A stretch of 54,034 bases of DNA from Vitrella brassicaformis CCMP3155. Taxonomy: Eukaryota; Protista; Chromerida. Below, piece by piece: positions 4,882-54,034 of the stretch (position 1 is its first letter; every line of letters starts with the position of its first letter). The translations under genes and the position numbers were made by a program. A model generated the notes under the pieces. The model ran no database searches and was not told where the DNA came from. It saw only the letters and a program-made list of their open reading frames with translations. The stretch is from contig CDMY01000545.1 in NCBI GenBank assembly GCA_001179505.1, positions 1-54,034 on the forward strand. Reading direction: 5' to 3'.

Positions 4882-5793
4882 ATGGCGACTGTTCTCATGA
4901 TGATGATTCTGTGTGTGGCGTCGACCAGTGTCGCCACGGAGGCAAGACCCGCACAACAGGTGAGTATACACCCCCCCCCCCATGACCCAGTCATTAGATT
5001 CTCTGGCGTGCACGGCTGATTCGTGTGTTCAGGTCCAGTTGCGTGGCCTGCAGGTGTCCCCTCCTCGCAACACGTCGCTGTCTGCGTCAGAGTATGAGGC
5101 GCTGGTCGGCCTGATGGGGGGCGATGACACTACACAAGTCACCTCACTCTACCGGTAGACACACACATTATGCCATCAGACAGCCAATGGGCAGATTCCG
5201 TCTATGTGTGCGTGTGTGTATTGAAGGACGTCTGTCCACGGCACCAACTATAGCGACCTGCTGGACAACGTGGGCGAAACAAAGCCTCTCGTCTTTGTGG
5301 TCAGGAAGGACAAGTATGTCTTCGGCGTCTACGTCAGTGACGGCATCCAGCTGCCCGACGACTTGACTACCTGGCACAACTACGGCAGTGATGTGTCGTG
5401 GTTCTCAGTGGCCTCGACAAACCGACCGAGATCGAGATCGACGAAGAGGATCAGTATGTGAAAGTGGCGGGGAGGAAGGGGGCGTGGAGAGGAGGGATCG
5501 GTGGGGGAAATGCGAGGGTAGGGATCGGTGGGTTTGTGTATCTGGGTTGGGGTGGCTCTGTCCAGCCTGCTGCCGACATCCGTGTTTGCCAGCAGTCCAC
5601 TCGCAGCAAATATCTGCCTGAGGGCTACACGGGAAAGAGGGATGGTTATGGCAATGCTGTGTTGGGCGGGTCGCTGACGTTCATAGCTGACGAGATAGAA
5701 GTGCTGCAGACGCCTTTCATTTCGTCAGCGGCGCAGATGGGTGTCTGTCTGTCAGTCTGTCTGTGGCTGTCGCTATTCCTCTTTTCGATGTAA
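4882..5793 (+). pseudogene. Secreted TLDc-domain gene with a 7-nt frameshifting deletion (pseudogene or assembly error)
   Basis: Signal exon MATVLMMMILCVASTSVATEA, then SLSASEYEALVGL...SLY|RTSVHGTNYSDLLDNV...LVFVVRKDKYVFGVYV...WFS. The frame changes at 5413/5414 and continues ...LGGSLTFIADEIEVLQ. Clearly paralogous to 51526-53553. The 3' end is uncertain. Confidence 0.75.
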
Positions 5794-5822
5794 ACCAGCC
5801 GTGAGTTGTTCGTGTCGTTCAT

Positions 5823-5865
5823 CTGGGCGGGTCACTCGTCTTCATGGCGGATGAGATAAAGGTGT
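5823..5865 (+). pseudogene. Orphan duplicate of the TLDc C-terminal strand
   Basis: Encodes LGGSLVFMADEIKV, matching LGGSLTFIADEIEV about 140 nt upstream. Confidence 0.65.
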
Positions 5866-14306: not shown

Positions 14307-15693
14307 ATGCCAGCCCCCGATGAGCTCGGCGGCGGCATTCCCGTCAGCGTTGAGTGCCTGATGGGCCTCGTGACCATCATGATCACCACTTGCCCACACG
14401 CGGAGGTACGGATGCACTGAGACGTGAATGCATCTGTTCGGAATCCGCCGATGCTTCGTTGCATGCATCATCATGTCTGCAGACGGGCAATGAGTGGCTG
14501 TGGGGCAACATGTGGAAGCACGTCAAGTACAACTTCAAAATGCGGTAACCAGAAGCCAGATTCGGCGCATCTTGTCGCGCTATGTACTCCTTTCTCTCTG
14601 TGTGTTGGTGGTTCGCATGGCTGCAGGAGGAGCATCACTCCGCGGTTCATCGCTGATTGCATCAGCAACACCATCGTGGCATATCTGGGGCTGGGGATCG
14701 TGCTGGATGCCTTCTCTGGCGTAGGGGGACAGACGGCCTCCCTCCTGGCCGCAGGGCTGACGGTCTACGCCTGCGATATCGACCGCACCAACGTCGAGCA
14801 CACAACACACAACGCAAGTGTCCATGGTATGGCAAGCACATGTGTGCTGCTGATATCATAGCATGTTCATTCAGCTGTGTTCATCGCTGCGCTGTCTTCA
14901 TTAATTGTCTGCAGGCAGGGGAGTGCTGGAGCGGCTGTTCATGAAGTGCGGGGACTACTTCAAGCAGGTCGCCAGCCTGGCCAGCAGATGGGCCCGCGAG
15001 GGAAAGAAGTTCGCCGCCATTCATTTTGATATGCCGTGGGGCGACGAGTACAAGAACAAGACATATGATATCAACAAGATGGGCGATGGCACGATGGTGA
15101 GTGAACGCAGAGACGCACCCATCCACCATGCCCTGTGTGAGTGTGTGTTTGTGTATGTGTGTTGCCACTTGTATGACTTGCAGTCGGCATTCAGAGTGCT
15201 GGACGTCGCGGCGTCGTTGACCGACTCGTTCGTCGTCAAGTGCCCCAAGACTGTCCCCATCGCCGATGTGGTAAGTTGGCGAGTCCATTCGAAGTCTCCG
15301 TGTGTCGAGTCCGTATGGTCTGCGTGTGTGTGTGTGTGTGTGTCTGTGTGGATGCAGCTCAAGCTGGCGTACTATGTCCAGTCCATCGAGAGTCGCGTCG
15401 GCACGGCGAATACGCCACTCGTCGAGGTCTTTATGAGCGGCAACAAAACCACCAAGGCCGTCATCTACATCGGAGACATCGCCAAGAAGTGAGATGGAGA
15501 CGCAGACAGAGACACAGCCACAAAGCATAATGCCCACATGTGTGTCCGCAGGCGTCTGGCCGATATCCCCCCGGCCGCCCGCGTCAGAGACCTGACTCGC
15601 CAGCAGCTGACGATCGAGGAGTGTGCGAGCGGCATGAGTGCCCAGGGCAAAGCCGTCGGCTGCGCCAAGGTGCTGTTCGAGCCCCACGCGTAA
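14307..15693 (+). CDS. TGS1: Trimethylguanosine synthase-like SAM-dependent cap methyltransferase (divergent)
   Basis: SITPRFIA; VLDAFSGVGG; ACDID; HNASVHG; GDY; DMPWG in place of SPPWG; KCPKT. The last exon joins AA|gtgaga...ccgcag|G RLADIPP and ends FEPHA-TAA at 15691-15693. The start codon is uncertain and may lie upstream. Confidence 0.8.
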
Positions 15694-16444
15694 AGCGCGA
15701 GATGGGGCTGCCCCCTTGCGAGTATGCCAGTGGTGACACGACTGTCGGGCGATAGGTAGCGTCGACAGATAGACGGACGGACAGAGCAAAGGACAATGTA
15801 CGTGCGGGCGTGTGTATGATGCGACCGCCCCCGTTCGGTAGCATTTTCTGAAGACTTTATGGACATCCTTCTGTGGACAGTGCGTCGCCATGTGAATCTG
15901 GTGGATGGAGGATGTACACAGCATGTCAGTCATCAGAAGAAGACAGCAAACCCACGACGGCAAACGGGACAATTGATTTACACACCTGCACACATCATAA
16001 CCATCCTCCAACACGGTTACACCTCAGGGTCAAGGGTCGAGTCATACGGACATACATCCATGCATCTGTGTGGTCAATCCATGAAAGAACTGTCCATCTC
16101 TACGGCTACGGCTCATGCACAGTGTTCGGCATCATCTCCACTTGTCGAGCCTCTGCCGAGCGAGCCGCTTGCTGCACACAGAGACAGACAGATGTCAGAC
16201 ACCGACCACAAAGACGGGTTGAAGTCATCATGCGATATCAGACATCCGGTGGTCTATGCAGGCGTCACGCACACTATGTGCACATCGCCAGGCCACATAC
16301 ATAAAGATGGATAGGGGTGTGTATCCAGCCATCTCTCCAGACCGATCCAACTAACAACCCTGCCCTCAACACACACCCCATCCGCCGCTTGCACGATCAC
16401 ACGCGGGGCCAGCCCAGGCCAGCCCAGGCCATCTTGGTCTTGTC

Positions 16445-17957
16445 TCATCTCAGCCAAGCAGGTGGCTGTGTCATGACCTCCCTCTTCTTCTTGACCGGCC
16501 CGCCACCCGCACGCTCACCCTGCTCATGCTGCTGCTGCTGCTGGAAAAACCTGTGTCACACACAGACACACACACTCGTGCACAATCGGATCTCATCCGC
16601 AGCCACTACTCTGCCTGCCTGCCTGCCTGCCTGTCTGATCGTGTGGTTTCTCTCTCACTTGATGTGGGCGTTGGTCTGTAGTCGTCCGAATTCGCCATTG
16701 TTTCTTTTGTACGCCGCGACGATCCTGCACACACATACAGCACCAAGCCGACCACGCAGCAGAGGGAAGACACGCAAGCAGACGACCATCCATCAAAAGG
16801 CAGCTGGCTATGTGTCAGTTAGTTGCATCAAGTCAATCGGCCAGAAGCGACGGCAGTACCGAAGTGGCCTTCCCATAAATTTCTGCTCGTCCAGCTGCGA
16901 CAAAAAGCACAGAGTATTGGAGTGCAAGTCCAGGAGCGCAACGACCTCCATCGAGTGGAGTGAGTGTGTGTACCTCCAGTGCCTGCCTCAAAGCCTTAAA
17001 CCAGACACACCAACAGGACAACACACGTGCGATGCGATCAGTCACCACGGGGCAGCCACGTGCCACATACACGTCCGTGTACGCACGAATGCAGCAAGGT
17101 GCGCGTCTCTCTCCTCTCTGACTCCCCTCCCCTCCCTCCCCTGCCCTCCCCTCCCACCGCATGCCCTCCCTACTTGGTAAGTACGGAACTCAACGTATGC
17201 CCGCCCCTTGTGGTCCGCTTTGGCGAACTTGGGGTTGGACGGCACAGATGAAGTGTTGGACTGGTGCGGGTCGGGCACGATGCTCAGGATGGGACCGCAG
17301 GACTGGAAGAACACCTTCAGGTCCTCAAGTCTCGCGTCAAACGAGATGTTGCTCACGAAGGCGAACCGCACTTGGTCCAGCTCGTCTTTATCGCCCGACG
17401 CCGCAGCTGGCGTCTTGTCGTTGTTGTCGTGGGCGTCGACTTCATCCTCCTCTGGCTGAGAGTCCTCGTCCCCGTACAGCTCTTCGTCGTCCTCATCCTG
17501 CAGGTGAGCCAGCGAGGGAAGCAGAGATCACACACAAACGTATCGGTGACTCCTTCTGATTGCTTCTGACTGTCCTCTCTTCTGGTGGTGTTGACACACG
17601 TACCATCCAGGCGAAGTGTTTGCGCTTCTTGCTCTGGTCCTCGATCTCTGGCTGATTCTCCTCGTTGCTCACGTCCTTCTTGGGCTCATCCTCCTGACAC
17701 CACGAACTCACCACGCCAATACATCCATGCCCGTCTTCACTACTCATGCCTGTGTGTCTGTGGCTGACCTCTTGCCCCGCCTCTGCGTTCTCCCCGGCGT
17801 CATTAGCGGCATCGTCGGCCACATCCTCATCGGCCGCCAGCCTCTCGAGCTCCTCCTTCTCTTCCTTTGTCGGCGACGCTTGGGGATCCTTTTCCTCTTC
17901 CAGTTCCAGCTGCCACCTCTTCTTGGCCGGCTTGTGCTCGCGCTTAGGACCCAGCAT
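16445..17957 (-). CDS. Single-RRM RNA-binding protein with an acidic N-terminus (~7 exons)
   Basis: RNP2 FAFVSNISF; RNP1 KGRAYVEF; then ALRQALE (21-nt exon, 16974-16994)|LDEQKFMGRPLR|IVAA; ends PAWLR-TGA at 16445-16447. Confidence 0.85.
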
Positions 17958-17978
17958 ACTGTCCTCCTCCTCCCTTCT

Positions 17979-18015
17979 GAGCTAAGCTTGCAGACCGATC
18001 GCCTCTGAGCTCGCG
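17979..18015. promoter_or_regulatory. Candidate bidirectional promoter element (GAGCTAAGCTTGCA...GAGCTCGCG)
   Basis: Lies within the 96-bp gap between divergent ATGs at 17957 and 18054. The 14-mer is identical to 34612-34625. Confidence 0.55.
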
Positions 18016-18053
18016 ACGAAGAAGCGAAGGACAGATCGCCGACAGATCCATCC

Positions 18054-19674
18054 ATGGGAGCGTTCCTCACTTGCGTGGCAGCCCTGGTTGCGGCCTCCCA
18101 GGCCACCGCGTCATGCCGGGGATGCAGAGCTGCCGATGGAGTGTGCTTCGCGGCGATAGATGCCTTGCGGCCTTCCTATGCCCGGCATGCAGCCCTTCCA
18201 GTCGGCCACCGGCCTCGTCAGGCTCTGCCGTCGCTCAATCTTCCCGCCCTCAGCCGGCGAACCAGGCGGACTATCCCGTCTGCAGCGACGGTGAAGTCTG
18301 CAGATGTGGCCGTGGCGAGCGAGACCGACAGTGAATCATCCGACAGCACTAATGCGTCGAACGCCGCTCAACGAGGGGATGAGGATTATGTCCCTGTGTG
18401 GATCCCTCGATGGGTGGTGCGGCTGTCGCGGCCTGTGTTGGTGCAGGTGGTGGCTGCGTTGGGTTTGTACTTCTTCCACATGCTGGTTCTATCCCGCAGC
18501 TGCATCGCCTTCCCTGTGCAGCTCATCCCCAACAAGTACGGCCTCTTCCAGTCCATCGGCCTCGACTCATGTGCCGGCCTCGTCGCACTCGCCGCCGCTT
18601 ACATTGGGCGGGTCAGCATGCTCACCAACAGGGCCGCTGCACTGAGAGGACACCGAGATGATAAGGCGCTCCCGCCAGTCGACGGCAACCGGCCCAATGC
18701 GACGACCGCTGTGGTAACGAGCGGCGAAGACGGGCAGCCAGATCCTCTGCTGCCGCTGTCGCCCTATCCATGGAAGATCCCCGTAAAGTCGCGTCCGAAG
18801 GCACTGATAGTGCTGGCGCTGCTGATCCTGGCCTACTTCAGCTCGGGGTATGGCGCCGTGGTGTTCGAGTGGAGCCTGTATGGCCTGTCAGCACTGGGGG
18901 TGCCCATCAGCATCGCCATGCACAGATCACTGCAGGTCGGGCAGTCAGCCAGCCAGCCAGCCATGAGAAAGGGGCAAGCACATCTGTCTGTCTGTCTGTC
19001 TGGTTGTGTGTGCCTGCAGGTGCTGTTGGGTCACTTGTTGTGGGTGGGCACCGGCTGTCTGATTCTGGGGATTGGTCTGCGTCCGTTCTTCCCGCCCCGC
19101 GGCTCGTGGTACCGACTGCAGTGGCGCCGCAGTTGGCTGTGGTGGGTGGTGGGGGGCTACTACGTGTCGTCGCTCCTATTCAACGGCGCCGACGTCATCA
19201 ACCAACTCGTGCTGCCACCATCGGTCTTTCAAGAGGTGAGTGAAGGAGGACCGGCCGACCAGGGGCATGAAGGGAATGACTAACGCTACACTTCTGTTTG
19301 TGCGCGTGTGTGTGTGTGTTCAGGGTGGTGAGTCGGTGGTGACCAAGATGATCAACCCCGAGAACAACGACATCCTGGCGCTGGCTGTGGGCTCGATCGC
19401 CCCCTGCGTGTCTGCCCCATGGTGGGAGGAGGTGCTGTACAGGGGCTTCACTTTGCCGGCTCTGAGCGTGTTCATGCCGCCGTGGGTGGCGCTGCCCGTG
19501 TCCGCGGTGCTGTTTGCCGTCCACCACATGTCGATCCAGTCGATGATCCCCCTGGCCACCCTCGGGCTGGCATGGGGCATACTTTACATGCTCAGCAACA
19601 ACCTGCTCGTCACAGTACTCATACACGCCATGTGGAACTCTAGGGTCTTCCTTGGCTCTTTCCTCGGACTCTAA
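18054..19674 (+). CDS. CPBP (CAAX protease/Abi) family intramembrane metalloprotease, probably plastid-targeted
   Basis: Motifs EEVLYRGF, FAVHH and IHAMWN; multiple TM segments; signal-like start followed by an R/S/A-rich transit-like segment; introns near 18935-19019 and 19237-19323. Confidence 0.9.
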
Positions 19675-50029: not shown

Positions 50030-50340
50030 ATCTATGCTTGAGAACTTGTGCGTCTGGATGCCGTCTTGAATGTAGACGCCAAAGAGGATGACAATCAGCA
50101 AGTCCGGCCCATCCTCCACACGGTCCAGCAGATCGTCATAGCTTGTGCCGTCCACAGAGGCCCTGTATGACACACAGAGACACACACACACACACACACA
50201 CAAGCGACAGACAGCTACTTGCTCTTGTGCACGAACACATCTGTGTGCATGAGGGTGATGTACCGATCTGTAGAGGGTGGTGAGGTCGTATCGTTTGTTG
50301 CCTCACGCAGGCCACGGAGGCCCTCATATTCTGACGCCAG
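50030..50340 (-). pseudogene. Degraded TLDc-domain copy
   Basis: SEYEGLRGL exon nearly identical to 53221-53290 but with a small deletion; donor GT changed to AT at 50266-50267; next exon ASVDGTSYDDLLDRVEDGPDLLIVI-LFGVYIQDGIQT carries internal deletions. Confidence 0.8.
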
Positions 50341-50672
50341 TTAGGAATCACCACAGGGAGACGTTACAGGAACGCACACATTAAGACACACCACGACGGC
50401 GACCTTCATATACGTATGTGTGTGCATGCTATTGGGTGGCGTTGCTCAGCCACGTCACGGCCGTATGATTTGTCCCACTCCACTTGGCGAAATGCATCAT
50501 TCAATCAGAAAGTGCCTTTATCAAGTGATTGCACAGTCGCGTCTGCACAGTTGGGTCCACCACCGCACACATTACACACACAGGGCACCTACACACACCG
50601 AGAGAGACCTCATGCACACTGCACAAAAAATATGGTAGTTTCGCAGCGCAGGCGGTTCTCGAAAGTGACACC

Positions 50673-50971
50673 NNNNNNNNNNNNNNNNNNNNNNNNNNNN
50701 NNNNNNNNNNNNNNNNNNNNNNNNNNNNNNNNNNNNNNNNNNNNNNNNNNNNNNNNNNNNNNNNNNNNNNNNNNNNNNNNNNNNNNNNNNNNNNNNNNNN
50801 NNNNNNNNNNNNNNNNNNNNNNNNNNNNNNNNNNNNNNNNNNNNNNNNNNNNNNNNNNNNNNNNNNNNNNNNNNNNNNNNNNNNNNNNNNNNNNNNNNNN
50901 NNNNNNNNNNNNNNNNNNNNNNNNNNNNNNNNNNNNNNNNNNNNNNNNNNNNNNNNNNNNNNNNNNNNNNN
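50673..50971. other. Assembly gap (299 N) followed by a C22 run
   Basis: Directly visible in the sequence. Confidence 1.
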
Positions 50972-51525
50972 NCCCCCCCCCCCCCCCCCCCCCACCCTCC
51001 ACACACACACACGTACTCACACCCCAGCACACTTACAGTCACGCAGGCACAGAGAAAAAGAGAGAGAGGCATGTACATCATGAAATCGATCGGCTCACCC
51101 TCAGGCGTCCCAGTAGATGGCAGACGGCAGCCCCGCCACAGCACAGCACCACAGCACATGTGGCAGTCTATGGGTATGTGTGTTAGCGCAGTGCAGAGCA
51201 GTCACTACTTGACTAAGCAACACACAGCGGAACAGCACCCACATGCCAGCTGTGTCGCGGAACAACACTCCTAGCACACACACACACACACACACACATT
51301 TCGTTTGGCCAGGGCTCACTGGTGGCCATCCGATCACGGAGCTAACGGGACAGACGACACGTACACAGCACTTACATGTACTCATGTTGTCAGAGACACA
51401 CACGTTGAACACGTACACTTACAGACAACTTACAGACAGATGCACACGCACTTACACACACACATCGCTCCTACACACACACATCGCTCCTGTTCCGCCG
51501 CACCAACAACACTGGTCGAGTGCTT

Positions 51526-53553
51526 CTACAAGAGCCCCAACGTGCAGATCACCATCGCTACCACCACCCCGCCCCACCACAATCCCCCCCCACACACCGC
51601 TGCGCTCTCAGTCGGATCGGGTGGTGTTGACGTTAGCGGTGTTGCCGTAGAGGTTGGGGGGGTTGTCTCGCTGGGTGTTGGTGTCGGCTCGGGCTCGGAA
51701 GTGGATGTTCTCGTCGGCTCCGATGTCGGTGTCGGCTCGGGGGTTGTTGTTGTCGGCTGTGGGGGGGGGGCTTGTGGTCGGCTGAGGCGGAGTAGGAGTG
51801 CTGCGCGGCTCGGCGATCTCTCCGCGCACTTGCAAGATTTCTATATCATCAGCCATGAAAACCTCCGACCCGCCCAGCGGAACGGCTCGATCGCCCTGAT
51901 TCCCTGGATTCTCGTAGCCCGGAGGCAGCCAATTCCACTCAGTCAGCTGACTGCAGTTGCGGATGTCGGCAGCAGGGCGACTGCATGTGCCGTCGCAGTT
52001 ACCGTCGGCCAGGAAGAACTCACCATAGGAAGAACTCACCATAGACATCCTTGCAGCTGTATCTCGGCCACCCCACCGCCAATCACGCCGCACAGTCCCC
52101 CGCCTTCCCGCCACATCGCATGTCACCCTCTGAGGTATGTCGATCCTGGTCGGATTCTTGTAGCGTCCCGATAGTGAGAACCAAAACACCTCACACTTGT
52201 ACTTGTGGCTCTCTACCGCATTGGCGGGCGGCCGGATGCCTTCGCTGATGTAGACACCGAACAGATACGGGCCTTCGCGGATGACTATCATCAAGTCCGT
52301 CTCATTCTCCACACGGTCCAGCAGCTCGCCATACGATGCTCAATCCACAGAGGCCCTGTATCACACACACACACAACAAACAGCCACTGTAAGTGCTTTG
52401 ATGCACCACACGTGAGTGTGTTTGAACAGACACATACCGGTGGAGCGTGTCGACCATCGTGTCATTTGATGGCTTCAGCAGGCTAAGCAGCCCGCCGTAC
52501 TCCACATCAGATAGCGACAAGCCGGCAGGTGGTTGAGCAGGCGGTGGCGGGGGGGGCGGGGCAGTCGGTTGTGGCGGGTACACTTGAAGCACCTCTAGCT
52601 CATCTGCCCGAAACTCAAACGACCCCGCCAGCCAAGCATACTTACGGTCGCCCCTGTCGGTGGGGTCACCAGAGTTTCCCCCCCGCACACCCTCGTAGCC
52701 GTCTGGAACATACTCTATGGGGATGTCTTGAAAGCCGCTGTCGATCCAGCCATCGTCATAATACGGCTCGTTCAAGCCCAACATCAACCTTCCGCCGATA
52801 AGCACCCTCGATCCACACGCGATGTCCCAGGCGCTGGGTATACGGTCACAGTAGTCTCCCACCCTGCCCACCACCCGTATCTCCTGCCACGATTGCCATA
52901 GCTTGATTTCGGTCGGCGTGTCGAAGTGGCCCGCCAGTGAGAACCACGACACCTCACTCTTGTAGATATGCATCTTGGTCGCGTTGGCGGGAGTTTGGAT
53001 GCCGTCTTTGATGTAGACGGCAAAGAGATACTGGTCTTTGCGGATCACAATCACCACGTCCGTCTTGTTCTCCACAAGGTCCAGCAGATCGCCATAAAAT
53101 GTGCCGTCCCAAGTGGCCCTGCATGCCACACATACACACACACACACACACACACGACAGACAGCTATTGTTGATGAGGTGCACCAAAATACACATCTGT
53201 ATATATGTGTGTATACCGACCTGTAGAGGGTCGTGAGCTTCGTATCGTTCTTTGCTTCCAGCAGGCCACGGAGGCCCTCGTATTCTGACTGAGACAGGTT
53301 GGTGCCGACCGGAAAAGTGTCCTGCAAACGACGCACCTACACACGAATGCACAGTCAGAGAGCCGCAGACAGACAGACAAACAGACAGACATCGAGGAAA
53401 GGCAGCTGACTGATTACGTTGCGGGTGCGTGTGTGAGCGTGAGTGTGCGTGTGGTACAGACGTACATACCTCGTGTGTTGTGCTTGTGGGCGTCGAACAG
53501 AGGGCGAGCGTGACGGCCAAGGCCAACAGCATCATGCCACGGAGAGCCACCAT
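51526..53553 (-). CDS. Signal peptide + TLDc + Pro linker + TLDc + Pro/Thr stalk + GPI-like tail (carries an in-frame TGA and a homopolymer frameshift)
   Basis: MVALRGMMLLALAVTLALCST...; TLY|RATWDG...VIVIRKDQYLFAVY...LAGSFEFRADELEVLQV; second domain LH|RASVD*ASY...LGGSEVFMADDIEILQV; PTTTTPEPTPTSEPT...; ESAAVCGGGLWWGGVVVAMVICTLGLL-TAG (51526-51528). Confidence 0.75.
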
Positions 53554-54034
53554 TGGGTGAGGGACCGAAGGACACGCACACAGCTACTCTGTGAACAGTG
53601 ATCCGCGTAGATCCGCAGGAAGAAGGACACGCTGACGGACACAGAGAGATCTGGCCACGACATTCACTCACGGGACGGCAGGAAGGATACGCAACAGACA
53701 GGTGAAGACAGACAATAGATGGGTGAGTGATCCACGAGATCAGGCAAGCAGATCTCCCTCTTCCATTCCGAGTAAGGGGCACCCACTGCGTGAGCACCCC
53801 GGCCCGCGAATTGGGCGGGGGTCCAAAGCAGCGTGCGAAGTGGTGGTGAATTATGCGTCACAGAGACATGCACAGCACGAGTGTTGGCGAGAAGCACACC
53901 GACGCATGCAACAATAGCGAGAGTGTCAAAAAACATGCAGACAACAATGGCGGGAGCTTGAAAATGGCAATAACATGCAGGTACTCAGAGGGCTGCAGTA
54001 AGAACACAAGACACGCCCTTATTGAAGACGTGCT

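What the first reader, a model, noticed from the sequence alone, without database searches (positions are those of the whole stretch)
51526..53553. TLDc domains repurposed as a secreted, probably GPI-anchored surface protein
Seen: an N-terminal hydrophobic signal exon, two tandem TLDc-like domains, many N-glycosylation sequons (NLS, NDT, NKT, NAT, NDT, NET, NCS), a mucin-like PT stalk, and small residues (ESAA) before a terminal hydrophobic tail and stop. Established: characterised TLDc proteins (OXR1, NCOA7, TBC1D24, MEAK7, yeast Oxr1/Rtc5) are intracellular V-ATPase binders or oxidative-stress factors. Inference: an extracellular TLDc family would be a new use of the fold (lectin/adhesin, cyst-wall component, or an effector at a coral or host interface). 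The paralog at 4882 also has a signal peptide and sequons, so this is a family trait.
Basis: partly seen in the sequence, partly recalled or inferred. Interest (0 to 1): 0.88.

Follow-up and report, generated by a model that had tools for sequence, protein, structure and literature searches.

The report
Truncated secretory TLDc gene in Vitrella

Summary
The window is Vitrella brassicaformis CCMP3155.

- **What the mRNA carries.** Spliced RNA contigs from two runs (0 mismatches, 0 gaps) join the signal-peptide exon to the TLDc exons. They carry an in-frame TGA at 52342-52340, and the PT stalk and hydrophobic tail lie one base out of frame after a C10 run.
- **What is encoded.** The product is the annotated 298-aa protein: signal peptide, RRLQD motif, one TLDc domain, a Pro-rich linker and a 35-aa stub. 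It has no anchor signal.
- **TLDc identity is solid.** Pfam TLD scores 30.8 bits against a cut-off of 24.5. The AlphaFold model has pLDDT 89.5, and the 16 best PDB fold matches are all TLDc structures.
- **The family-level idea survives.** About 25 Vitrella paralogs carry signal peptides. They have six times more sequons per domain than signal-less relatives, and an NDT sequon is present in 18/20 versus 0/25.
- **An intact copy exists.** P0022 (CEM33989.1) reads signal peptide, TLDc, PT stalk and the same tail in one frame.

Secretion, glycosylation and GPI anchoring are still predictions. Plastid targeting is not excluded. This scan's first readers had already flagged "secreted TLDc" elsewhere in this genome.

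The parts
53470..53553 (-). Exon 1: start codon (53553-53551) and signal-peptide-like N-terminus. It has a basic n-region (MVALRG), a 13-residue hydrophobic core and an S/T-rich c-region.
   Evidence: RNA contig X4 record 17 joins 53542-53468 to exon 2.
53221..53336 (-). Exon 2: starts with VRRLQD (the conserved [VL]R[RG][LVM]Q motif), then the N-terminal helix of the TLDc domain with sequons NLS and NDT.
   Evidence: GT-AG introns of 133 and 102 nt are confirmed by RNA joints and pieces.
52438..53118 (-). Exon 3: body of TLDc domain 1 (sequons NKT, NAT), a Pro-rich linker, and the first helix of TLDc unit 2 (sequon NDT).
   Evidence: Pfam TLD on spliced P0001:36-262 gives E 3.4e-7, 30.8 bits against a cut-off of 24.5. 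Model pLDDT 89.5. TLDc fold hits.
52340..52355 (-). Coding start of exon 4 (ASVD) and the in-frame TGA stop at 52342-52340. It sits where paralogs have the nearly invariant Gly of the 'S.DG..Y' motif.
   Evidence: Identical in RNA contigs X4 and X5 and in the X3 contig.
51827..52339 (-). TLDc unit 2 relic (sequons NET, NCS). It is open in frame but lies downstream of the stop, so it is part of the 3' UTR. It contains a 16-bp tandem duplication at 52011-52042.
   Evidence: Pfam TLD weak hit, E 0.027. 70% aa identity to D2 of paralog P0002, dN/dS 0.47. Sister to P0002 in the tree, support 100. Duplication.
51761..51770 (-). C10 homopolymer (G10 on the + strand) where the D2 frame and the stalk/tail frame part by one base.
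   Evidence: The run length is confirmed by RNA contigs X4, X5 and X12.
51610..51768 (-). PT-rich (mucin-like) stalk relic, in a frame different from D2.
   Evidence: This frame has dN/dS 0.35 against the L001 paralog, while the D2-continuing frame has 2.1. The homologous stalk is in frame in the intact paralog P0022.
51526..51609 (-). GPI-signal-like end relic: ESAA (small residues), a Gly/Trp-rich spacer, a hydrophobic C-terminus with no charged residue, then a TAG stop at 51528-51526.
   Evidence: Closely similar tails occur in L001 and in the intact P0022.
50033..50367 (-). Degenerate relic of a further TLDc copy (exon-2-like and exon-3-like pieces with an internal deletion), downstream of the N gap at 50673-50972.
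   Evidence: tblastn and translation.
4882..5795 (+).
   Evidence: The frame offset was not checked against reads.

Best explanation
This is a transcribed, correctly spliced but decaying member of a Vitrella-specific secretory branch of the TLDc family.

**Ancestral layout.** It is preserved in one frame in paralog P0022 and, as a two-domain version, at paralog locus L001: signal peptide, [VL]R[RG][LVM]Q motif, TLDc (one or two units), Pro/Thr-rich stalk, and a C-terminal GPI-attachment-like signal.

**State of this copy.** A nonsense codon at the start of the second TLDc unit, and a one-base frame offset before the stalk, have turned D2, stalk and tail into 3' UTR.

**Current product (shown).** The present ORF gives 298 aa: signal peptide, one TLDc domain with four sequons, a linker and a short stub.

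**Fate of the product (inferred).** If translated, it enters the ER, is N-glycosylated and is released as a soluble lumenal or secreted TLDc protein, like the several paralogs that end just after the domain. It is not a membrane-anchored one. Because the stop lies in the last exon, the mRNA would not be expected to undergo exon-junction-dependent decay, which fits its being assembled at good depth.

**What the domain does (speculative).** The V1 sector that known TLDc proteins bind is cytosolic, so it cannot be the partner outside the cytosol. The most likely role is a glycoprotein binding or coat module in a family that evolves by duplication and loss.
For: - **Organism and gene model:**
- **Exons, stop and frames:**
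- **RNA:** spliced contigs with 0 differences across the stop, the 16-bp duplication and the C10 run, in X4, X5 and X12, plus the X3 contig.
- **TLDc identity:** Pfam above its cut-off, and 46 of 47 family domains hit TLD. PDB sequence hits are all TLDc proteins apart from two chance hits. The model has pLDDT 89.5 and pTM 0.87. The 16 best fold matches are all TLDc structures, probability 0.99-1.0, TM by target 0.54-0.67 for single-domain chains.
- **Ancestral frame:** stalk and tail have dN/dS 0.35, the alternative frame 2.1, with dS about 0.5 to L001. In intact P0022 the alternative frame is closed by several stops.
- **The breaks are independent:** L001 is broken at other places.
- **Secretory branch:** signal-peptide-bearing domains cluster in the tree, 6 changes against 18.5 in shuffles. 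Sequons per domain are 2.40 versus 0.40, and an NDT sequon is in 18/20 versus 0/25 members. Whole-protein sequon density is 1.04 versus 0.35 per 100 aa, Mann-Whitney p = 8e-7.
- **Birth-and-death context:** relic copies in the window and tandem TLD genes at L002.
Against: - No signal-peptide, GPI or plastid-targeting predictor could be run. Those calls rest on simple hydrophobicity and small-residue rules.
- Logan contigs drop rare variants, so an intact allele in the culture is not excluded.
- All RNA and DNA runs may be from one strain, so fixation of the breaks in nature is unknown.
- dN/dS of D2 (0.47) is no higher than that of D1 (0.30-0.52). Either the stop is recent or D2 is still somehow used.
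- Sequon enrichment is partly inherited within clades, so the p-values overstate independence.
- No protein-level evidence exists for any member.
Confidence: 0.78

Rival explanations
1. One reading: this gene itself makes a two-TLDc, PT-stalked, GPI-anchored surface protein. The stop and the frame offset would be sequence errors, or would be bypassed by read-through plus frameshifting.
For: All modules lie on one transcript in the right order. D2 and the stalk/tail frame still look like coding sequence against the paralog, with dN/dS 0.47 and 0.35.
Against: The TGA and the C10 run are identical in contigs of three RNA runs and one further sample. Two separate recoding events would be needed. 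No alternative splice removes them, since exon 4 is collinear in X4 and X5. The TGA replaces a nearly invariant Gly, as a plain nonsense change would.
Confidence: 0.04
2. The whole locus is a transcribed pseudogene. The 298-aa product is not made or has no function, and the locus only documents the decay of a tandem TLDc array.
For: There are two disabling lesions here, two at L001 and one in the 4882 copy. A degenerate third copy lies at 50033-50367. The 16-bp duplication and other indels lie in D2.
Against: The ORF up to the stop is intact. It keeps the family's nearly invariant residues and folds confidently. Several paralogs naturally end right after a single TLDc domain. The mRNA is spliced and well represented. 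dN/dS of exon 2 and D1 is 0.3.
Confidence: 0.3
3. The N-terminal signal is the first half of a bipartite plastid or endomembrane targeting signal. This branch of TLDc proteins would then work inside the plastid compartments or the endomembrane lumen, not at the cell surface.
For: Vitrella plastid proteins use a signal peptide followed by a transit peptide, often with Phe at +1 (PMC6668581). Four close relatives (P0009, P0037, P0087, P0074) have Phe right after the likely cleavage site. A short S/T- and Arg-rich stretch precedes the domain in this gene.
Against: - This gene, and all tail-bearing members (P0022, P0085, P0067), lack the Phe.
- The presequence after the signal peptide is only about 14-20 residues.
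- The conserved sequons, the PT stalk and the charge-free hydrophobic C-terminus fit the surface route better.
Confidence: 0.15

Closest known systems
TLDc domain proteins with solved structures: NCOA7 (8ar6, 7obp, 7uzg), OXR2 of zebrafish (4acj), Skywalker/TBC1D24 (6r82), mEAK7 (7u4t, 7une), yeast Oxr1p (7fde), Rtc5p (9nn1)
   Same: Same fold (Foldseek probability 0.99-1.0) and the same Pfam family PF07534, scored above its cut-off.
   Different: - 10-15% identity.
- About 50 extra residues in loops.
- An N-terminal signal peptide and conserved N-glycosylation sequons in place of a cytosolic context.
- Conservation of contact residues was not tested.
Vitrella paralog P0022 (CEM33989.1, UniRef A0A0G4GT89, auto-named 'TLDc domain-containing protein')
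   Same: Same exon plan, signal peptide, R-G-L-Q-E motif, TLDc domain, PT stalk, and a closely similar tail of the form (A)ESAAVC.GGL.WGG..VAM.ICT.GLL.
   Different: P0022 has one TLDc unit and is intact in one frame. The window's gene had two units and has lost everything after the first to a stop codon and a frame offset.
Paralog locus L001 (CDMY01000770; split models P0003 and P0002)
   Same: Same two-unit layout, Pro-rich linker, stalk and tail. dS is about 0.5.
   Different: It is broken at different places: a frame offset inside D1 and another after TTSTPEP. The decay is therefore independent in the two loci.
TLD combined with extracellular-type modules in cnidarian protein clusters (EGF/EGF_CA+TLD, Ig/I-set+TLD, fn3+TLD; ESM Atlas)
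   Same: A TLDc domain in an architecture that implies an extracellular or lumenal setting.
   Different: They come from another lineage and have other partner domains. They are known only from automatic annotation, and I did not inspect their sequences or signal peptides.
GPI-anchored surface glycoprotein families of apicomplexans (e.g. the SAG/SRS type). This is an analogy from general knowledge, not homology.
   Same: Signal peptide, a globular domain, an S/T/P-rich stalk in some members, a short charge-free hydrophobic C-terminus after small residues, and multigene families with pseudogenes.
   Different: An unrelated fold. No experimental GPI evidence exists for any Vitrella TLDc protein.

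Membership tests
TLDc domain family (Pfam PF07534) | Sequence match to the TLD profile above Pfam's gathering score | tested here: met
   P0001:36-262 (spliced exons 2-3) scores 30.8 bits against a cut-off of 24.5, E 3.4e-7. 46 of 47 family domains match, best E 1.3e-11. Exon-3-only pieces fall below the cut-off, at E 0.014 and 0.027.
TLDc domain family (Pfam PF07534) | TLDc fold | tested here: met
   AlphaFold2 model with pLDDT 89.5 and pTM 0.87. Foldseek ranks 1-16 are all TLDc structures, probability 0.99-1.0. The next hit has probability 0.14.
TLDc domain family (Pfam PF07534) | Cytosolic or nuclear setting and binding to the V-ATPase V1 sector (a property of all characterised members) | tested here: not met
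   The setting was tested by sequence only. A signal-peptide-like N-terminus is spliced onto the domain, with conserved sequons. V-ATPase binding and contact residues are not testable with these tools.
GPI-anchored protein (this gene's product) | C-terminal attachment signal in frame with the mature protein: small omega residues, a spacer, and a hydrophobic end | tested here: not met
   The signal-like sequence (51609-51529) lies after the TGA at 52342-52340 and in another frame. This is confirmed in RNA.
GPI-anchored protein (paralogs P0022, P0085/P0055, P0067) | N-terminal signal peptide plus a C-terminal attachment signal | tested here: inconclusive
   Simple rules are met: small residues (ESAA, ASAS), then 13-17 hydrophobic residues with no charge, ending the protein. 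No GPI predictor, no transamidase check and no biochemistry were available.
Secretory-pathway protein | Cleavable signal peptide | tested here: inconclusive
   There is a basic n-region, a 13-residue hydrophobic core (Kyte-Doolittle 2.8 over 10 aa) and small residues at the likely cleavage site. SignalP-type predictors are not available. Indirect support comes from the sequon excess.
Pseudogene or decaying gene copy | Disabling lesions relative to intact relatives, verified as not being sequencing errors | tested here: met
   There is a nonsense codon at a nearly invariant Gly position and a one-base frame offset before the stalk. Both are present in independent RNA contigs. The upstream 298-codon ORF remains intact, so the decay is partial.

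The most novel reading that the evidence does not exclude
Vitrella has built an N-glycosylated, partly GPI-anchored surface or secreted glycoprotein family from the TLDc domain. The family evolves by tandem duplication and decay. It carries a conserved R-x-[LVM]-Q motif just after the signal peptide that could be a processing or sorting signal akin to the apicomplexan PEXEL/TEXEL. This would be the first extracellular role for TLDc, in the closest free-living relatives of apicomplexan parasites.
Probability: 0.3. Interest if true: 0.72.

Novelty: new variant of a known kind. Interest (0 to 1): 0.5.

Why it matters
The only established biochemical role of TLDc domains is binding and regulating the cytosolic V1 sector of the V-ATPase. 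A clade of about 25 TLDc paralogs carries signal peptides, clade-specific conserved sequons and, in some, a stalk and a GPI-like tail. That implies the fold has a second, V-ATPase-independent use. It also offers natural material for asking what surface of TLDc is used for binding.

For genome annotation, this locus is a warning. A tidy domain series read from DNA can be a relic. Here RNA shows that only the first third is translated.

For chromerid and apicomplexan biology, the family adds a candidate surface or secreted repertoire. It also adds a conserved post-signal-peptide motif worth testing for processing.

Tried and rejected
1. **Assembly error.** I suspected that the stop and frame offsets were homopolymer errors of an old assembly. 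This is rejected: RNA contigs from X4, X5 and X12, and the X3 contig, are identical to the window.
2. **Hidden intron or alternative splice removing the stop or restoring the frame.** Rejected. Exon 4 is collinear from 52354 to 51450 in both spliced contigs. The other listed joints have 24-30-nt sides and 'between: not known', which is typical of paralog cross-matches.
3. **The N/D-rich continuation of the D2 frame as the true C-terminus.** The annotation of P0002 reads it this way. Rejected: its dN/dS is 2.1 against 0.35 for the stalk/tail frame, and that frame is closed by several stops in intact P0022.
4. **The tail as a module shared with other Vitrella proteins.** A search with P0022:262-309 found only P0022 itself.
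5. **Relatives outside Vitrella.** The exhaustive phmmer gave 83 representatives, and every one I looked up is from Vitrella, apart from a chance Myroides hit. The profile word search also gave only Vitrella or unnamed JGI transcripts.
6. **Literature.** No paper was found on secreted or extracellular TLDc, or on TLDc in Vitrella. The Vitrella GPI search gave nothing specific.
7. **Pfam on single-exon pieces.** These gave only sub-threshold hits. The spliced domain was needed.
8. **V-ATPase contact residues.** Not attempted, because no residue-level structural alignment output or PDB sequences were available as references.

Full report
**Source and gene model**

A word-indexed protein search with the exon-3 translation returned a 100% match to a 298-aa 'unnamed protein product' of Vitrella brassicaformis CCMP3155, on a 54,034-base contig, which is the window itself. 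UniRef auto-names it 'TLDc domain-containing protein'.

The gene lies on the minus strand. Fitting P0001 to the DNA gives these exons, with GT-AG introns of 133, 102 and 82 nt:
- exon 1: 53553-53470
- exon 2: 53336-53221
- exon 3: 53118-52438
- exon 4: 52355 onward

**What the sequence shows**

- A hydrophobic N-terminus lies in exon 1.
- A first TLDc-like unit spans exons 2-3.
- A Pro-rich linker follows.
- A second unit (D2) lies at 52339-51827.
- A PT-rich stretch and 'ESAA' plus a charge-free hydrophobic end stop at 51528-51526.

However, three things break the series.
- The frame of exons 1-3 meets a TGA at 52342-52340, five codons into exon 4.
- D2 is open after it, but continues into an N/D-rich reading that ends at 51610-51608.
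- The PT stalk and tail are in a frame offset by one base. The change of frame lies in or next to a C10 run at 51761-51770.

The TGA sits where the family has the nearly invariant Gly of 'S-x-D-G-x-x-Y'.

**Are the breaks real?**

I first suspected homopolymer errors, because frame offsets also occur in the paralog at 4882 and at a paralogous locus, L001. Laying public runs on 51450-53650 settled it.
- Contig 17 of run X4 (2128 nt, depth 56) matches four blocks with 0 other letters and 0 gaps: 53542-53468, 53334-53220, 53117-52437 and 52354-51450. Contigs 22-23 of X5 match the same blocks in the same way.
- These contigs are spliced mRNA. The boundary ambiguities of 1-4 bases resolve to the GT-AG introns above.
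- The mRNA carries the TGA, the 16-bp tandem duplication (52011-52042) and the C10 run unchanged.
- X12, another RNA run, covers 51589-51790 without difference.
- An unspliced contig of a different sample (X3) covers 51450-52496 without difference.

So two things hold. But the transcript's ORF ends after 298 codons, so D2, stalk and tail are 3' UTR.

One caveat applies. Logan contigs drop rare variants, and the runs may all derive from one strain.

**Is it TLDc?**

- Single-exon pieces gave only sub-threshold Pfam TLD hits, at E 0.014 and 0.027.
- The spliced domain (P0001:36-262) scores 30.8 bits against the 24.5 cut-off. 46 of 47 aligned family domains hit TLD.
- A profile of the family finds Skywalker/TBC1D24, OXR2, NCOA7 and mEAK7 among PDB sequences. 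These hits are weak (E 0.02-0.8) and cover only the N-terminal half.
- An AlphaFold2 model built on the 47-sequence alignment is confident, with pLDDT 89.5 and pTM 0.87.
- Its 16 best PDB fold matches are all TLDc structures: NCOA7, Skywalker, OXR2, mEAK7, Oxr1p and Rtc5p. Their probability is 0.99-1.0, and the next hit drops to 0.14.

Membership of the TLDc fold family is established.

**The family**

An exhaustive phmmer search gave 83 representatives. Every one I looked up is from Vitrella, apart from a chance bacterial hit. The profile search also found only Vitrella proteins or unnamed JGI transcripts.

Many members have no signal peptide and carry RING fingers or long N-terminal regions. 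Earlier notes of this scan list further TLDc fusions in this genome, including one titled 'Expanded family of TLDc proteins, mostly predicted to be secreted'. I take those notes as leads only.

About 25 sequences start with a signal-peptide-like segment followed by a conserved [VL]-R-[RG]-[LVM]-Q motif at the first residues of exon 2. In a maximum-likelihood tree of 54 domains, the signal-bearing ones fall mainly into two clades, with 6 label changes against 18.5 in shuffles. D1 of this gene groups with P0009, P0037 and the D2/P0002 pair, with support 95.

Sequons are strongly enriched in the signal-bearing branch.
- There are 2.40 versus 0.40 per domain region.
- One NDT sequon before 'LTSLYR' is present in 18 of 20 members against 0 of 25.
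- Across whole proteins the density is 1.04 versus 0.35 per 100 aa, p = 8e-7.

Shared ancestry inflates these statistics. Even so, the pattern is what exposure to the ER lumen would select for.

**The ancestral architecture**

Paralog P0022 (CEM33989.1) has, in one uninterrupted frame, a signal peptide, an R-G-L-Q-E motif, one TLDc unit, a PT stalk and a tail closely similar to the one here. The alternative frame there is closed by several stops. P0085/P0055 and P0067 end in a different charge-free hydrophobic tail after small residues.

Locus L001 has the same two-unit layout as the window, but it is broken elsewhere: a frame offset inside D1 and another after 'TTSTPEP'.

Between the window and L001, dS is about 0.5. 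The dN/dS values are:

| Region | dN/dS |
|---|---|
| Exon 2 and first part of D1 | 0.30-0.31 |
| Rest of D1 plus linker | 0.52 |
| D2 | 0.47 |
| Stalk and tail frame | 0.35 |
| N/D-rich alternative frame | 2.1 |

The stalk and tail were therefore coding for most of the time since the duplication, and the lesions are recent and independent in the two loci.

A degenerate third copy lies at 50367-50033, beyond an N gap, and there are tandem TLD genes next to P0022. Together these fit evolution by repeated duplication and loss.

**Most likely working**

*Shown:*
- The mRNA is spliced and abundant enough to be assembled.
- Its ORF gives a signal peptide, one TLDc domain, a linker and a stub.

*Inferred:*
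- The product enters the ER, is N-glycosylated and is soluble. Several paralogs naturally end right after one TLDc unit.
- The stop lies in the last exon, so exon-junction-dependent mRNA decay is not expected.

*Speculative:*
- The function outside the cytosol is unknown. It cannot be V1-sector binding as in OXR1, NCOA7 or mEAK7, so a binding or coat role is the best guess.

Whether this truncated copy is still useful or is a transcribed pseudogene cannot be decided here.

**Rivals**

1. *Full-length GPI-anchored product from this gene.* This needs two recoding events or an unseen allele, and I rate it at about 4%.
2. *Pure pseudogene.* I rate this at about 30%. It is compatible with most of the above.
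3. *Plastid or endomembrane targeting.* In Vitrella a signal peptide is also the first part of the plastid signal, often followed by Phe (PMC6668581). Four close relatives have Phe right after the likely cleavage site. This gene and all tail-bearing members do not, and sequons, stalk and tail fit the surface route better. I rate it at about 15%.

**Novelty**

No paper in the library describes secreted TLDc proteins or Vitrella TLDc. The proteins carry only automatic names.

Extracellular TLDc is probably not unique to Vitrella. Atlas clusters combine TLD with EGF/EGF_CA, Ig/I-set or fn3 domains, mainly in Cnidaria. I did not inspect those sequences.

I therefore rate the family as a new variant of a known kind, and this particular locus as a partly decayed member of it.

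Noticed in passing
window 53336-53319 (-); also P0022, P0009, P0037, P0085, P0087, P0091, P0093 and others: A conserved [VL]-R-[RG]-[LVM]-Q motif lies at the very start of exon 2, 4-15 residues after the likely signal-peptide cleavage. It is present in about 20 signal-bearing TLDc paralogs and absent before internal TLDc repeats. Here it reads RRLQD, and in P0022 RGLQE, which fits the R-x-L-x-E/Q/D pattern of the apicomplexan PEXEL/TEXEL. It may be a processing or sorting signal.
   Followed up: partly
P0009, P0037, P0087, P0074 (paralogs on other contigs): Phe follows directly after the likely signal-peptide cleavage site (SSG|F, SDA|F, CHA|F, SHA|F), as in plastid bipartite signals of chromerids. 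Part of this clade may therefore be plastid-targeted. The window's gene lacks the Phe.
   Followed up: partly
window 50033-50367 (-), and N gap 50673-50972: A degenerate relic of a further TLDc copy (exon-2-like and exon-3-like pieces, with the 'RKD.Y' strand deleted) lies just downstream of the gene. It is separated from it by a 300-N scaffold gap, so more of the array may be hidden.
   Followed up: partly
window 4882-5795 (+) and about 5815-5860 (+): The paralog P0052 has a signal peptide, an LRGLQ motif and one TLDc unit with a one-base frame offset near 5413-5420, then SSAA plus a hydrophobic end. A stray 'HLGGSLVFMADEIKV' fragment of yet another copy follows it. The frame offset was not checked against reads.
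   Followed up: partly
L001:9090-11020 (CDMY01000770.1): A two-unit sister locus is annotated as two separate genes (P0003, P0002) because of a frame offset inside D1. A second offset lies before the stalk. The annotated N/D-rich C-terminus of P0002 is probably an out-of-frame reading.
   Followed up: partly
L002:10001-18827 (CDMY01000802.1): The intact P0022 gene lies about 3.5 kb from a run of three more TLD genes (14589-15357, 15929-16867, 17959-18827, minus strand). P0055 and P0025 are on the same contig.
   Followed up: no
P0056, P0088, P0028, P0041, P0049, P0070 (other contigs): The signal-less clades of the same family often have a RING finger N-terminal to the TLDc domain (Pfam zf-C3HC4-type hits on P0056), which is a RING-TLDc architecture.
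   Followed up: no
window 52360-52437, 53119-53220, 53337-53469 and 51380-51480: The introns and the 3' flank are rich in (CA)n and (GTCT)n-like microsatellites. The RNA contig of X4 runs at least 350 nt past 51450, so the 3' UTR after the premature stop is more than 1.2 kb long.
   Followed up: no
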